Source: Salpingoeca rosetta
Taxonomy: Eukaryota > Protista > Choanoflagellata
DNA: 64,000 nt
NCBI GenBank assembly: GCA_033442325.1
Contig: JAWQFM010000015.1
Span: 126,843-190,842, forward strand
Reading direction: 5' to 3'
Below are positions 42,312 through 48,996 of this stretch, piece by piece (the first letter of the stretch is position 1; each line of letters starts with the position of its first letter). The notes under the pieces are model-generated. The model was given only the letters and a program-made list of their open reading frames with translations. It had not been told where the DNA came from and made no database searches. Made by a program: the position numbers and the translations under genes.

Positions 42312-45300
42312 ATGGGGAACAGCAAGTCCAAGGGCGCGACGAGCGCAGCCATGCCGGCGGACGCGGCGGCCAACGGGCACGCGATTCAGGGGCAGCGGCG
42401 CATGTCCAGGGCGGAGAAGAAGGCGCTCAAGCAGAGCAAGAAGCAGGCGCTCGCCGAGGAGAAGCAGCGCAAAAAGGAGGCCAAGAAGGAGGCCAGGAAG
42501 AGCAGGAAGAACGGCGGTGCCAAGAACAAGGACAACAACCAACCACAACACGACGCTGCGGCGGCTGCTCACGCCAGCAAGCGCAACAACGCCGGCGCAG
42601 ATGACGCCCGAGAGGAGATGGAGCGCATCAAGGACGAGGAGGTGCGTCAGCAGCAGGCAGAGGAGGCGCGCCGCCGCGACAACGACCGCGTCGAGGCGCA
42701 GGAGGAACTGCAGCACCTGAAGCGCATGGAGGCGAAGCGCACCGAGGAAGAGCGGGCAGCCAAGGCCAAGGCGGCGGCGGCGGCAAAGGAAGACGACCGA
42801 CAGCAAGAGGAGGCGCAGCAGCGGCACCGCGAGGAGGAAGAGAGGCGGAAGCAGCGCGAGCGTGAGCAAGCCGAGGCGGCCAGGCAGAAAGAAGAGGAGA
42901 AGAGACGAAAGGAGGAGGAAAAAGAGCAACGGAAGCAGCAAGAGGCGGCGGAGGAACTGCAGCGCATGAAGCGCGAACAGGAAGAGGCCGAGGCCCGCCG
43001 GCGCAAGAAGGAGGCAGAGGAGGAGGAAGAGCGGAAGCGTAAACAGCAGCAGCAAGAGGAGGAGGAGCGAAAGCGAAGGGAGGCGGAAGAGGCAGAGAGG
43101 AAACGCAAGGAACAAGAAGAGGCAGAGCGTAAACGAAAAGAACAGGAAGAAGAGAAGGAGAGACAGCGCAAGGAACAGGAAGAAAAGGAGAGACAGCGCA
43201 AGGAACAGGAAGAAGCAGAGGCTCGCCGCAAAGTGAGTCAGGGTGTGTGCATGTGTGTGTCTGTGTGTGTGTCTGTGTGTCTGTGGTGAAGAACTCCGTC
43301 CGTCTGTGTGCGCGCCTATCTCTTGGCAGATCTGCTTGCTCTTCCTGCCATCATGCCTCTTTCTTTCTCTTCTTGTCAACGTGAGGCTGACATGTACCAT
43401 CCTCCACCCCTACCACCCACCATCACTTCCAACACCATAATAACCGCGCACGACAGCAGGAGGAGCTTGAGCGCCAGGCAAAGGAGGCAGAAGAGAAGCG
43501 ACGAAAGGAGGCGGAGGCATTGGCGGCCGCAGACGCAAAGCAGAAGGCGTTTGCAGCGGCACGCCAGCGCGAGGAACAGGAGAAGAAGAAGCGGGAAGAG
43601 GAGGCAAAGGAACAAGCTAAGCAACAGGCCGCTGCCGATGAAAGCGTCAGCCACGTGTCTCCCTTTGGCGCACGCTTGCGTAAGGTCTCCAAGGACAACG
43701 TCAACACAGACGCCAGTGCACAACAACAACAACAACAGCAGCAGCAGCAGCAACAACAACAACAACAACAAGGCGGCGGTGCCACGGACACGGCTGCAAC
43801 GCCTGCAGCTTCTGTGTCGTCGCCGTTTGGCGCCAAGTTGAAGCCACTCTCCTCCTCTGCGCTGGTGACGCCGACAGGCACACCCAAGGCAACAAGCACG
43901 GCAAACACACCCCAGCAAGCAGCCACGACCAGCAACAGCAGCACGCCTGCGGGTGGACTGCGGCCCATGAAGCTGCGCAACGAGTTCCCTGGGCTGAAGA
44001 AGCAGGACGACAGCACAAGCAGTAGCAGCAAGAAGCCTGCGGGCGACGACGATGAATACGAGGAGCTTGACCCGCGCGCCATTGAGGCCGCAAAGTGGGT
44101 CGATAAGGAAATCAGAAAGCTCATCGGAGAGATCCAACGGTACGGCGCGTCGCTTGTTGTGTGTGTGTGTGTGTGTTTGGGGGAGGGCGGTGGAGGGGGT
44201 GAGTGAGTGAGTGTGTGTGTGTGTGCGTGTGTGTGTGTCCAGATGTGTATGTGTGTCCAGATGTGTGTATGTGTATGTGTGTCTGTGTATGCGTGTGTCT
44301 GTGTGTGTGTCTGTGTGGTGTCAATGTGTCTGTCCTCACCCCGCCCCGTCATCCCATCCCAATCCCTTGACCTCTCGTCGACACAGACTCGGCTCTCCCA
44401 ACGGCGACGGCAAGTACACGGTCAAGTTTGGGCACCTGTTTGTGGAGACGGCCAACATCTTCGAGGCGCTGACAGGAACGCTGAAGACGGCCAAGAAGTA
44501 CAAGGTGGTGACATACGAGGGGGAGGTGTTGTATCAAGGCTCAAGCGATCACGTCACCGTCACCCTGCTCAAGGACACGCACGATGGTGAGTTGGGGTAC
44601 ACCTGCATTGCATGCTGTGGGGTTTGGTGGTTGCTTGTGGTTACAAGTACCTGTTTGCGTTCTGGCAGTGTGCTCGTGGTTCTTTATCTCCCTCTTTGCC
44701 TCTTTTCCTCCTTGCCTCTCCTCTTTCTCGTCCCGTGCTCCTACAGCTCTGCTTGTCTCATCCGCCGCGGTGCGTGACCGACATGTGACCACCTTGCTGT
44801 GATTGCGCGTGTGCAGGTGTCGAGATCAAGCGACGCAAGAAGCGAGACCTCAAGGCGCCAGGCCTCAAGGCCAAGAGCAAAGGTTTCAGCACATCCTCCT
44901 TGCAACACGCGCAACAAAAGTGCTACATCTGCAAGAAGACCGTCTACCCCATGGAGTTTGTCGGCGCCGCAGACAAGGTGGTGCACACTGCTGTTTATGC
45001 ATGCAGCTGTTTGCTTTGTTTTGCTGTGTGTCTGTGTGTCTGTGCGTCTGTGTGTCTGTGTGTGTTTGTGTGTTGTATTCGTCTGCGTACACTTTACACA
45101 CGTCTGTTAACGCCAAATCACGCTACGCACCACCTAATTATAGGCTTTCCACAAGAACTGCTTTAGGTGCAAGGAATGCAAGACAGTGCTCAAGCCAACA
45201 GAATGTACGTGACATCAACAGTATGTGTGTGTGTGGGTGGGGGATGGGGGGTTTGCAAGCGCTTGAGCTGTGTTGGTACGCGCCCGTTCCTCTCCCCTTG

Positions 45301-45523
45301 CTTGCTTTGCCAAGTTTGATGTGTCGCCCGCCTATTTGTCTCGCTATTCCTCTCTCTTCCCTCCAATACACTCACTCACGCGCACACTCATTCACACTCG
45401 CTCACACGCGCACACATACGCACAGACTGCACTGTGGACGACCAGTTTTATTGCCGCACGCATTACACACAGCTGTTCATGAGCGGCGGGTACACACATG
45501 CACAGCGCGGCACCGACGAGTGA
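42312..45523 (+). CDS. Myristoylation motif + E/K/R-rich helix + Costars (ABRA/ABRACL) domain + C-terminal LIM domain
   Basis: Exons 42312-43232, 43457-44139, 44387-44586, 44817-44977, 45144-45204 and 45426-45523. MGNSKSK; Costars VDKEIRKLIGEIQRLGSPNGDGKYTVKFGHLF..ANIFEALTGTLKTAKKYKVVTYEGEVLYQG; LIM CYICKKTVYPME..FHKNCFRCKEC..FYCRTH. Confidence 0.9.
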
Positions 45524-46180
45524 GGACGTTCACCCCTTTGCTTCACGTCACACCAGCACAACACCAGCTGCCACTTGGCTCACTCGATGTGTTTGTTTTT
45601 CTTTTGTTGTCTCTTTCTGTCGTTCGTTCCTTGTTGTGCTTTTCTTTACTTGTTCTGTGCTTTTGCTTTGACTCTCAGTCAGTTCCAAGACAGTTGCTCG
45701 TACGCACCTGTTGTTATTCACTCCATTTGTGTCACATATCGGACCTGTCTTTGTTTGCACCCATGTGCTCTTGTGTGTGTGTCTCTCTCTCTGTCTGTCT
45801 GTCTGTCTGAACGTTTGTCTGTCTGACGAACTGTCATGTCACCTTGTCATTCCGCAAGGCTGGCCATCTTGTCGTTGTGCGCCAAGTGCTTCCAACTCCT
45901 CAACGCAACATTGTCATGTGCCACACATGATCACTGTATCACCACGTATCTTCTCAGTCATGTCATAGACTCCTCCCCTTCTTTGCAAAGAACGGATCAT
46001 TGAGAAATTTCTGCACAGAACCCTCGCATGACACCCCCTGTCGACACAGCAGGAAAGAAAGCACATGGTCGCAACTTCCTTTTGCACATATTTAAACGAG
46101 GATAAGAGCACTCGAGAGCACCTTCGCTGCACGACCACCACCGCCACCTCCCCATCAGCCGCGCCACCAAACGACGCAAG

Positions 46181-47882: not shown

Positions 47883-47942
47883 CCAATCACGCTGTCATAG
47901 CACGCTGATTGCATTTTCCCGCCAAACTCACCAGTTTTTGAA
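47883..47942. promoter_or_regulatory. CCAAT, overlapping double E2F site and CHR hexamer upstream of HEI10
   Basis: CCAAT 47883-47887; TTTTCCCGCCAAA 47914-47926; TTTGAA 47937-47942; ATG at 48063. Confidence 0.5.
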
Positions 47943-48062
47943 CGCAAACCTTTTGTCTCTCGTCTTCTCGTCTTTTCACCTTCTCGAGTGTGGCATTGGA
48001 CTGCTTCGGTAGTGCAGTTCCTCTGCTAACTAGCGAGGCACGCACCGTCTCGGTACTGAGGC

Positions 48063-48996
48063 ATGGCAGACTTCCACTGCAACAAGGTATGGGAGCGCTG
48101 CGACCATCGTGTTCTTAGCTGTTGTGTGTGCTCTGCTTGCATCAGTGATAAATGGTCCTGGCTCGTTGTTCTCAACTCCTTTGCTTCTTATGGTTGCTGG
48201 ATCGGCTTGTTGGATGTTGTGTTATATGGTGATTGCACGACCACGTCGTTGCACCAGTGCCGAGGTGCGGATTTGGGCCCTCGACAATGGGCGACGCGCT
48301 GCTCGCACTTGCTTTGCGATGCCTGCGGGCAAGCTGCCATGGAGGCTGCCAAGGCCTCGATGGAGCCTGTGCTGTGTCCCGTGTGCAAGACCCCACTCAT
48401 CGAGAAGCATGATCTCGTCAACTTTGACCCAAACCCAAGCGAGCAACACCGCAGCATGATCCTGGCCGGGCTGTCACCAGCGCTCATCATCGAGATTGCT
48501 GGCCGCGCCCTATCCTTTCACACATACCAGATGTCGCTGCAAACGGTACGTGATGCAAAGTGACTGGACTGGCTGCATTGTGTGCATGCAACTCTACTTG
48601 GTGCGTGAGTGTACATGTACGTGTGCGTGTGTGCGTGTGTGCGTGTATGCGTGTATGCGTGTGTGTGTGCTTGCTCTGGTGAGTGTAAGATGCCTGCGTT
48701 TTGTTCAGGCAACTTGCCAGCGTTGCCATTGATCCCACAACCGTTATGCTATGCTGAATCAGCACCTCATGCGCCAAGAGTTGAAGACCAAGACCTCTGC
48801 ACTGGAAGCCAAGTTGCAGAAGCTTGCAGTGCACGGGCAGTCTGAAATGGACAGGCTGCACACCCAACTGCAAGCTGCCAAGGAGGAGCTTCACCGAACC
48901 GTTTCAGAGTTGCAGAGTGCCCGCCAAGCCTTTGCAGAGAAATCGCGCCAGGTCAGAGATGATGATGATGATGAAGATGATGATGAAGATGATGAA

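What the first reader, a model, noticed from the sequence alone, without database searches (positions are those of the whole stretch)
44817..48545. RING-LIM gene looks like a chimera of its two neighbours, born by tandem duplication
Seen: gene order on + is Costars-LIM, then RING-LIM, then HEI10. The RING of the middle gene aligns gap-free with HEI10 across the second half (CDLCFQHEMWTASTTQRALLCPVC vs CDACGQAAMEAAKASMEPVLCPVC; THCSH vs TRCSH) and has its first intron at the same phase-0 site (CHK|CR vs CNK|CR). Its LIM has both introns where the upstream gene's LIM has them: AGK|TLH vs ADK|AFH (phase 0), and a phase-1 intron inside the codon nine residues before the conserved YC cysteine (DQLGDNNVYC vs YCTVDDQFYC; both donors GTACGT). 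Inference: one tandem duplication or unequal crossover of the segment from the LIM exons to the HEI10 RING exons produces exactly this order, fusing a meiotic E3 RING to a cytoskeletal LIM adaptor. The intact ORF with diverged sequence suggests the new gene was kept by selection.
Basis: partly seen in the sequence, partly recalled or inferred. Interest (0 to 1): 0.85.

Follow-up and report, generated by a model that had tools for sequence, protein, structure and literature searches.

The report
HEI10-RING plus LIM chimeric gene
In the choanoflagellate Salpingoeca rosetta, a small gene between a Costars-LIM gene and the meiotic crossover ligase HEI10 carries a fast-evolving copy of HEI10's RING joined to a divergent LIM domain, most likely made by one local tandem duplication; it is a tidy example of new-gene birth, but no transcript evidence could be obtained.

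Summary
The window is Salpingoeca rosetta. The three genes are PTSG_05830 (Costars-LIM), PTSG_05831 (RING-LIM) and PTSG_05832. PTSG_05832 is a true HEI10/CCNB1IP1 orthologue (PDB 9ges, E 1.2e-24).

**RING half: strongly supported as HEI10-derived.**
- The two RINGs are each other's only significant match in the 55 Mb genome (E about 3e-8), among at least 52 RING-like hits.
- HEI10 is the only real relative of the middle gene among 1.84 billion representative proteins.
- Both RINGs have the same phase-0 intron inside the first CxxC, and a 5-residue loop insertion that human HEI10 lacks.
- Silent sites are not saturated (dS about 1), and the middle copy evolved faster (17 versus 4 unique changes).

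**LIM half: supported only indirectly.**
- Its protein similarity to the upstream LIM (score 65.5) barely exceeds that to other LIMs (61).
- The first intron position also occurs in two unrelated LIM genes.
- Still, only the upstream gene has both intron positions, it has the highest nucleotide identity (0.53), and it is adjacent in the predicted order.

**Open points.** The LIM is non-canonical. The public annotation (147 aa) skips most of it.

Verdict: a probable lineage-specific chimeric gene of moderate interest.

The parts
42312..45523 (+). g1 = PTSG_05830, the Costars-LIM gene (upstream parent). Exons: 42312-43232, 43457-44139, 44387-44586, 44817-44977, 45144-45204, 45426-45523. The annotated start is 240 nt further upstream.
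   Evidence: Splicing gives an open 707-aa frame. Costars scores E 2.6e-24 and a LIM piece reaches the Pfam cut-off. The annotated gene has the same end.
44817..45523 (+). The three LIM-coding exons of g1 (44817-44977, 45144-45204, 45426-45523). Intron a is phase 0 and intron b is phase 1.
   Evidence: Borders are read. The LIM is canonical and close to the other S. rosetta LIMs of its class (scores 130-157).
46181..46213 (+). g2 exon 1: start codon to the K inside the first RING CxxC. Donor GTCAGA, phase 0.
   Evidence: The annotated model uses the same junction. HEI10's third intron also uses a GTCAGA donor.
46561..46923 (+). g2 exon 2: the rest of the RING, the remnant of the HEI10 linker and bundle region, and the first half-finger of the LIM.
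   Evidence: Its only significant hit in the genome is HEI10 exon 2 (E 3.9e-8). BLASTP is and HMMER.
46823..47480 (+). The intron of the public 147-aa model PTSG_05831 (donor GTTTGT). It removes 60 codons in frame, which is most of the LIM.
   Evidence: Derived from the P0001 sequence laid against the window.
47097..47175 (+). g2 exon 3: the LIM His and the junction between the two fingers, including a 4-residue insertion. It ends in phase 1 with donor GTACGT.
47481..47629 (+). g2 exon 4: the end of the LIM (Cys7-x2-Cys8) plus a 36-residue tail and the stop codon.
48063..48545 (+). g3 = PTSG_05832 (HEI10), exons 1-2 (48063-48086 and 48258-48545): RING, linker and head-to-head bundle region. 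This is the part copied into g2.
   Evidence: PDB 9ges CCNB1IP1, E 1.2e-24. zf-RING_5 scores 28.7 bits, above the cut-off. The reciprocal hit to g2 has E 2.3e-8.
48765..49656 (+). The remaining HEI10 exons (approximate start): coiled coil and tail. g2 has no counterpart to them.
   Evidence: P0003 sequence, annotated extent and alignment to 9ges up to residue 185.

Best explanation
g2 (PTSG_05831) is a lineage-specific chimeric gene.

Origin. A tandem duplication in the S. rosetta lineage spanned from just upstream of the LIM of the Costars-LIM gene to the end of HEI10 exon 2. It left both parents intact. At the duplication junction it joined HEI10's promoter and first two exons (RING, linker, remnant of the tetramer bundle) to a copy of the LIM exons and the 3' end of the upstream gene. 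The junction lies inside what is now g2 exon 2.

Later history. The new gene evolved quickly at the protein level but kept all eight RING zinc ligands and eight LIM-type ligands.

Likely function (inferred, not shown). It is a small RING E3 ligase whose target choice or location is set by a LIM-type protein-binding module, not by HEI10's coiled-coil self-assembly.
For: RING from HEI10:
- Reciprocal, unique genome-wide match (E 3.9e-8 and 2.3e-8; the next hits have E above 0.1), among at least 52 RING-like hits.
- BLASTP E 2e-13.
- Among 1.84e9 representative proteins, the only real relative is S. rosetta HEI10.
- g2 does not detect human CCNB1IP1 in the PDB, while g3 does at E 1.2e-24.
- g2 and g3 share a 5-residue loop insertion and a Cys where human HEI10 has His.
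- Both have the same phase-0 intron inside the first CxxC. The other zf-RING_5 gene, L032, has no such intron.
- Third codon positions match in 25 of 51 codons that encode different residues, against 14.5 expected; P = 0.001; dS about 1.0.

LIM from g1:
- Only g1 has both intron positions and phases, with identical GTACGT donors.
- g1 ranks first of 10 LIMs in protein score, nucleotide identity (0.53 versus at most 0.49) and third-position identity.
- dS is about 1.5, compatible with the RING value.
- g1 is adjacent, in the exact order a single duplication predicts.

A real LIM-like domain: it scores 15-21 bits against an own-genome LIM profile built without g2, versus at most 8.1 for 200 shuffles.

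Maintenance: the 207-codon frame is open (chance about 9e-5) and all zinc ligands are kept.
Against: - LIM protein similarity is not specific to g1 (65.5 versus 61, 61 and 57).
- The g2 LIM exons find nothing but themselves in the genome.
- The nucleotide excess towards g1 is only P about 0.06.
- Intron a is shared with the unrelated LIM genes L010 and L015. L019 has a phase-1 intron one residue away from position b.
- No similarity remains between the two intergenic regions or between the paired introns, apart from CA-rich low complexity.
- The LIM departs from the invariant 2-residue spacer between fingers.
- Pfam does not recognise the LIM pieces, and the RING is below the Pfam cut-off (20 versus 27.9 bits).
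- The public annotation skips most of the LIM.
- There is no transcript evidence, no orthologue and no outgroup synteny.
Confidence: 0.6

Rival explanations
1. Two or more steps. g2 began as a partial tandem duplicate of HEI10 (exons 1-2). It gained its LIM exons separately, either from another LIM gene or from g1 in a second event. The match to g1's intron positions would then reflect old LIM introns that several genes share.
For: The RING origin is secure. LIM sequence similarity does not single out g1. Intron a also occurs in L010 and L015, and L019 has a near-b phase-1 intron.
Against: This needs more events. No other S. rosetta LIM has both introns. g1 is the immediate neighbour and ranks first on every similarity measure. 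The RING and LIM dS values are compatible.
Confidence: 0.2
2. g2 is a decaying or mis-modelled partial duplicate. Only the annotated 147-aa form, or no stable mRNA, is made. The LIM-like exons would then be relics and not part of a working protein.
For: The public model skips 60 codons of the LIM. The LIM is non-canonical and invisible to Pfam. dN/dS is about 0.6 and g2 evolves faster, 17 versus 4 unique changes. Neither the 207-aa nor any further product was found in the protein collections.
Against: The frame is open over four exons (chance about 9e-5). All 16 zinc-ligand positions are kept while about 70% of the residues changed. The splice sites are intact with GTACGT and GTGCGT donors. 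Runs that hold 0.37-0.40 of the stretch's words fit a spliced RNA, but this is weak evidence.
Confidence: 0.13
3. g2 is an old paralogue. A RING-LIM gene would predate the S. rosetta lineage, and its position between a LIM gene and HEI10 would be coincidence or old linkage.
For: Protein identity is only about 31% and no non-coding similarity remains.
Against: Silent sites are not saturated. g2 shares derived features with S. rosetta HEI10 but not with human HEI10. No orthologue was found in 1.84e9 representative proteins, a library drawn from a collection whose sources include EukProt.
Confidence: 0.05

Closest known systems
HEI10 / CCNB1IP1 (meiotic pro-crossover RING E3; PDB 9ges; PMC13174674)
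   Same: The g2 RING and the roughly 40 residues after it are homologous to S. rosetta HEI10 exons 1-2. The C3HC4 ligand pattern, loop length and first intron are the same.
   Different: g2 lacks the coiled coil and the C-terminal tail. In human HEI10 these build the tetramer and the higher-order assemblies that its ligase activity needs (PMC13174674). Bundle and linker residues equivalent to human L77 and L86 are replaced in g2. A LIM follows instead. g2 does not detect CCNB1IP1 by sequence.
LIM domains of the class found in g1 and in loci L005, L006, L009 and L013 of S. rosetta (Pfam PF00412)
   Same: Eight Cys/His ligands in LIM order. The first finger has the VY-x-E-x-V ... K-x-x-H signature. 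Introns a and b are as in g1.
   Different: There are four extra residues, including an extra Cys, at the junction of the two fingers, where canonical LIMs have exactly two residues. The second loop is longer. The C-terminal ligand pair is C-x2-C, not C-x2-H. Pfam does not score the separate pieces.
Chimeric genes formed by partial tandem duplication, as described in Drosophila (recalled from my own knowledge, not checked here)
   Same: Parent-chimera-parent order, both parents intact, the 5' part from the downstream parent and the 3' part from the upstream parent, and fast protein evolution of the new gene.
   Different: This case is older (dS about 1-1.5, no flanking similarity left) and sits in a choanoflagellate. 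Polymorphism data and outgroup data are both lacking.
TRIM32 RING (PDB 5fey, 2ct2)
   Same: It is the best solved-structure sequence match to the g2 RING (E 0.002-0.03), which shows an ordinary C3HC4 RING pattern.
   Different: The match is weak and generic. There is no B-box or coiled coil, and the specific relative of g2 is HEI10.

Membership tests
HEI10/CCNB1IP1 family (tested for g3) | Full-length sequence homology to CCNB1IP1: RING, linker, bundle and coiled coil. | tested here: met
   P0003 against 9ges_A: E 1.2e-24 over residues 7-185. zf-RING_5 scores 28.7 bits against a cut-off of 27.9.
HEI10/CCNB1IP1 family (tested for g2) | RING specifically related to HEI10. | tested here: met
   Unique reciprocal hit to S. 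rosetta HEI10. Pfam zf-RING_5 scores only 20 bits, below the cut-off, and there is no direct hit to 9ges.
HEI10/CCNB1IP1 family (tested for g2) | A coiled coil and C-terminal tail after the RING, which drive self-assembly. | tested here: not met
   Homology to HEI10 ends near g2 residue 94-109. The rest of g2 is a LIM plus a 36-residue tail. g2 is therefore derived from HEI10 but is not a HEI10.
RING-type E3 ligase | Eight zinc ligands in C3HC4 order and spacing. | tested here: met
   C9, C12, C28, H30, C33, C36, C53 and C56 of g2 align with the HEI10 ligands. Ligase activity was not tested.
LIM domain (PF00412) | C-x2-C-x16-23-H-x2-C-x2-C-x2-C-x16-21-C-x2-(C/H/D), recognised by a LIM profile. 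| tested here: inconclusive
   The spliced domain scores 15-21 bits against an own-genome LIM profile, with shuffles at most 8.1. However, the 2-residue spacer is replaced by a longer segment with an extra Cys. The exon pieces do not reach Pfam. The whole spliced domain could not be submitted to Pfam because it has no reference.
Chimeric gene from one tandem duplication | Each half is closest to the matching neighbouring parent. | tested here: inconclusive
   The RING meets this clearly. For the LIM, g1 ranks first but by a small margin (65.5 versus 61; nucleotide identity 0.53 versus at most 0.49).
Chimeric gene from one tandem duplication | Exon-intron structure inherited from both parents. 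| tested here: met
   The RING intron and both LIM introns have the same phase and position as in the parents. Only g1 has both LIM introns among about 21 LIM domains surveyed.
Chimeric gene from one tandem duplication | Paralogous non-coding flanks (the intergenic region would be duplicated). | tested here: not met
   Intergenic 45524-46180 against 47630-48062 gives z = -0.7. The paired introns show no signal except CA-rich repeats. This is expected if the event is old, so it does not refute the model.
Chimeric gene from one tandem duplication | An outgroup with the parents adjacent and no chimera between them. | not testable with these tools
   No eukaryote genome collection was available. 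The homologue searches returned only the S. rosetta proteins.

The most novel reading that the evidence does not exclude
g2 is a young, adaptively evolving E3 ligase that took the catalytic head of the crossover-designation factor HEI10, including a remnant of its head-to-head bundle, and attached it to a cytoskeleton-type LIM adaptor. In S. rosetta it would work in the sexual cycle. It could retarget HEI10-type ubiquitylation to new substrates, or it could dock onto HEI10 assemblies and modulate them.
Probability: 0.12. Interest if true: 0.65.

Novelty: new variant of a known kind. Interest (0 to 1): 0.42.

Why it matters
[quoted passage not shown] In this case both parents, the order, the shared introns and a still-readable silent-site signal are all in one 6-kb stretch. 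S. rosetta also has working genetics and an inducible sexual cycle.

If the LIM-containing mRNA is real, the gene offers a natural experiment. It shows what a HEI10 RING does once separated from the coiled-coil self-assembly that human HEI10 needs for activity (PMC13174674). It also marks the public model PTSG_05831 as probably incomplete.

If the mRNA is not real, this is an ordinary decaying partial duplicate.

Tried and rejected
**RNA evidence**
- No letters of places 48635-48673 were sent to any search tool afterwards. Loci L002 and L026, which contain them, were not used.
- The supplements of Fairclough 2013 and two other S. rosetta papers hold no retrievable entry for PTSG_05830 to PTSG_05832; the files were cut when stored.
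- The share of words held by runs X4, X5 and X11 (0.37-0.40) lies between what the two splice models predict, so it cannot decide between them.

**Homologues outside the genome**
- The word-based searches with g2 exon 2, with HEI10, and with HEI10 residues 1-110 returned only the S. rosetta proteins.
- Two metagenome scans found nothing.
- A cross-species RING tree, outgroup synteny and branch-wise dN/dS could therefore not be done.

**Structure**
- AlphaFold2 on g2 residues 1-100 with a two-row alignment gave pLDDT 50.6. The model is unusable, so no fold search was run.

- The 207-aa spliced protein has no reference, and I did not type it. So Pfam, structure prediction and the exact-product look-up in transcript assemblies were not run on the full protein.

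**Readings rejected**
- An unspliced reading from the ATG at 46204 through 'intron 1'. It would replace the first RING CxxC with about 119 residues of repeat-derived low complexity.
- The z = 5.5 similarity between the two LIM b-introns. Both introns end in CA-rich runs of the kind seen in other introns here, so I read it as low complexity; I did not inspect the alignment itself.
- P0002 and P0004, which are repetitive Cys-rich proteins.
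Full report
**Identity of the window.** The sequence is eukaryotic, with short GT..AG introns and about 55% GC. The middle gene's main exon retrieves NCBI protein PTSG_05831 of Salpingoeca rosetta. 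The window is G000:C15:126843-190842 of a 55.4-Mb, 68-contig assembly. In the older public assembly the three genes are annotated with the same outer limits as found here: a 787-aa product ending at window 45523, a 147-aa product at 46181-47629, and a 250-aa product at 48063-49656.

**Check of the observation.** I rebuilt the three gene models from the sequence.
- g1 (42312-45523, six exons) has a long Glu/Lys/Arg-rich N-terminal part, a Costars domain (Pfam E 2.6e-24) and a C-terminal LIM.
- g3 starts with an 8-codon exon and a 96-codon exon.

- The RING intron is phase 0 between K and the second Cys of the first CxxC, in both g2 and g3.
- LIM intron a is phase 0, two residues before the His, in g1 and g2.
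- LIM intron b is phase 1, in the codon nine residues before Cys7, and both donors read GTACGT.

The weak-looking GTCAGA donor of g2 intron 1 is also the donor of the annotated third HEI10 intron. The annotated g2 model uses the same first junction.

**g3 is HEI10.** P0003 matches the solved structure of CCNB1IP1 (9ges_A) at E 1.2e-24 over residues 7-185. It passes Pfam zf-RING_5. Its Atlas look-alikes are 258-295-aa zf-RING_5 proteins of plants, chordates and fungi.

**The g2 RING is a copy of the S. rosetta HEI10 RING.**
- A six-frame search of the whole genome with g2 exon 2 finds only HEI10 exon 2 (E 3.9e-8; next hit E 2). The reverse search finds only g2 (E 2.3e-8; next hit E 0.17). The genome has at least 52 RING-like matches to zf-RING_5.
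- BLASTP gives 31% identity over 86 residues, E 2e-13. The match runs about 40 residues beyond the RING.
- A full HMMER pass over 1.84 billion representative proteins gave four hits: g2 itself, S. rosetta HEI10, and two repetitive Cys-rich proteins that are plainly spurious.
- g2 does not detect human CCNB1IP1 in the PDB; its best match is TRIM32 at E 0.002.
- Combining the alignments, g2 and S. rosetta HEI10 share a 5-residue insertion in the last RING loop, a Cys where human HEI10 has His, and nine further residues not found in the human protein. This points to a duplication inside the choanoflagellate lineage.
- In the same three-way alignment I counted by hand 17 positions where g2 alone has changed and 4 where S. 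rosetta HEI10 alone has changed (Tajima-type chi-square 8.05, P about 0.005). So g2 is the fast-evolving copy. The test assumes that the human protein is an outgroup to both.

**Age of the duplication.**
- In the 77 aligned RING codons, pS is 0.55 (dS about 1.0) and dN is 0.63.
- Among the 51 codons that encode different amino acids, 25 have identical third positions, against 14.5 expected by permutation (P = 0.001).
- The nucleotide alignment of the two RING exons stands 11.7 SD above shuffles.
- Silent sites are therefore not saturated. The low protein identity reflects fast amino-acid change, not great age.
- No similarity remains between the two intergenic regions, which the model says are paralogous, or between paired introns, apart from a CA-rich low-complexity match.

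**The g2 LIM.**
- The separate exons are too short and too divergent for Pfam. They find nothing but themselves in the genome.
- The spliced C-terminal part scores 15-21 bits against a LIM profile I built from ten other S. rosetta LIM domains. The best of 200 shuffles scored 8.1.
- All eight ligand positions can be assigned. However, there are four extra residues, including an extra Cys, where canonical LIMs have an invariant 2-residue spacer between the fingers. It is LIM-like rather than canonical.

**Where the LIM came from.**
- The Pfam LIM profile finds 22 matches in the genome, about 20 domains, and g2 makes 21.
- By global alignment, g2's LIM scores 65.5 with g1, 61 with L013, 61 with L005 and 57 with L006. 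g1's own LIM scores 130-157 with those same domains. So g2 falls in g1's LIM class, but protein similarity does not single out g1.
- At the nucleotide level g1 ranks first of ten: identity 0.53 against at most 0.49, and third-position identity 27 of 55. The excess in different-residue codons is only P about 0.06.
- Intron positions discriminate better. I read the exon borders of the LIM domains. Position a (phase 0, two residues before His) occurs in g1, g2, L010 (a LASP-like LIM, judged from memory) and L015. It is therefore not specific to g1 and g2.
- Position b (phase 1, nine residues before Cys7) occurs only in g1 and g2. L019 appears to have a phase-1 intron one residue away.
- The LIMs most similar to g2 other than g1 either have no intron (L005, L006) or have introns elsewhere (L009, L013). 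Only g1 has both positions.
- dS for the LIM pair is about 1.5, on only 32 silent sites, which is compatible with the RING value.

**Geometry.** Take the ancestral order [..Costars-LIM][HEI10 exons 1-2 | rest]. A tandem duplication of the segment from just before the LIM to the end of HEI10 exon 2 gives this order: Costars-LIM, then HEI10 exons 1-2 joined to the LIM exons, then intact HEI10. That is the observed order. If the gap-free RING alignment is simply extended, the end of HEI10 exon 2 (residue 104) falls three residues before the first LIM Cys of g2. This fits a junction inside g2 exon 2. That last point is inference.

**How it probably works (inferred).** In human HEI10, a linker helix (residues 70-75), a four-helix head-to-head bundle (82-96) and a long coiled coil build a tetramer. 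Ligase activity depends on higher-order assembly (PMC13174674).
- g2 inherited only the part equivalent to residues 1 to about 104.
- P82 and L93 equivalents are kept, while L77 and L86 equivalents are replaced (D and T).
- The coiled coil and tail are absent.

So g2 cannot be expected to behave like HEI10. It most likely acts as a small RING E3 whose partner or location is set by the LIM-like module. None of this was tested here.

**Weak points.**
2. The public 147-aa model uses a GTTTGT donor at 46823 and drops 60 codons in frame, which removes most of the LIM. Both forms are in frame, and I cannot say which is made. The LIM-profile score and the matching intron structure favour the 207-aa form.
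3. No orthologue or outgroup could be found, so the timing rests on dS alone.
4. The structure prediction failed (pLDDT 50.6).
5. The full spliced protein could not be passed to Pfam, structure prediction or the exact-product look-up, because it has no reference.

**Verdict.** The LIM half and the single-event model are the most economical reading, but they rest on gene structure and position more than on sequence. I put 0.6 on the single-duplication chimera, 0.2 on a multi-step origin, 0.13 on a non-functional or mis-modelled relic, and 0.05 on an old paralogue.

This is a new domain arrangement for a HEI10-derived RING, arising by a known route to new genes. Interest is moderate.

Noticed in passing
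window 46234-46296: A perfect 11-nt tandem repeat (TCTGCTGTCGT, 5.7 copies) lies inside g2 intron 1. Read unspliced from the ATG at 46204, it would be in frame with exon 2.
   Followed up: partly
window about 2341-2424, minus strand (locus L019): Another LIM gene lies in the same window. Its LIM seems to have a phase-1 intron one residue away from the g1/g2 position b, and a first intron at a different place. The borders were read from sequence only.
   Followed up: partly
G000:C10:535149-535235 (L032): This is the best zf-RING_5 match in the genome (E 5.6e-8). Its RING has a CNxC ... CAHIFCSAC pattern, so it may be an RNF212/Zip3-like pro-crossover paralogue. There is no intron inside its first CxxC.
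   Followed up: no
G000:C1:1316524-1323979 and G000:C7:1328077-1329759: The Costars domain family has 13 six-frame matches (about seven genes by my grouping), including two tandem clusters. Local duplication appears to be active in this family.
   Followed up: no
window 46823-47480: The public model PTSG_05831 (147 aa) omits 180 nt, or 60 codons in frame. These encode most of a LIM-like domain, so the annotation is probably incomplete or describes an alternative isoform.
   Followed up: partly
window 48958-49044: A long (GAT)n run begins just inside the third HEI10 intron, a few bases after its GTCAGA donor. Many introns in this region carry (CA)n or (TG)n runs next to their splice sites.
   Followed up: no
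window 42072-42311: The annotated start of the Costars-LIM gene is 240 nt (80 codons) upstream of the ATG I used. I did not check which start is real.
   Followed up: no
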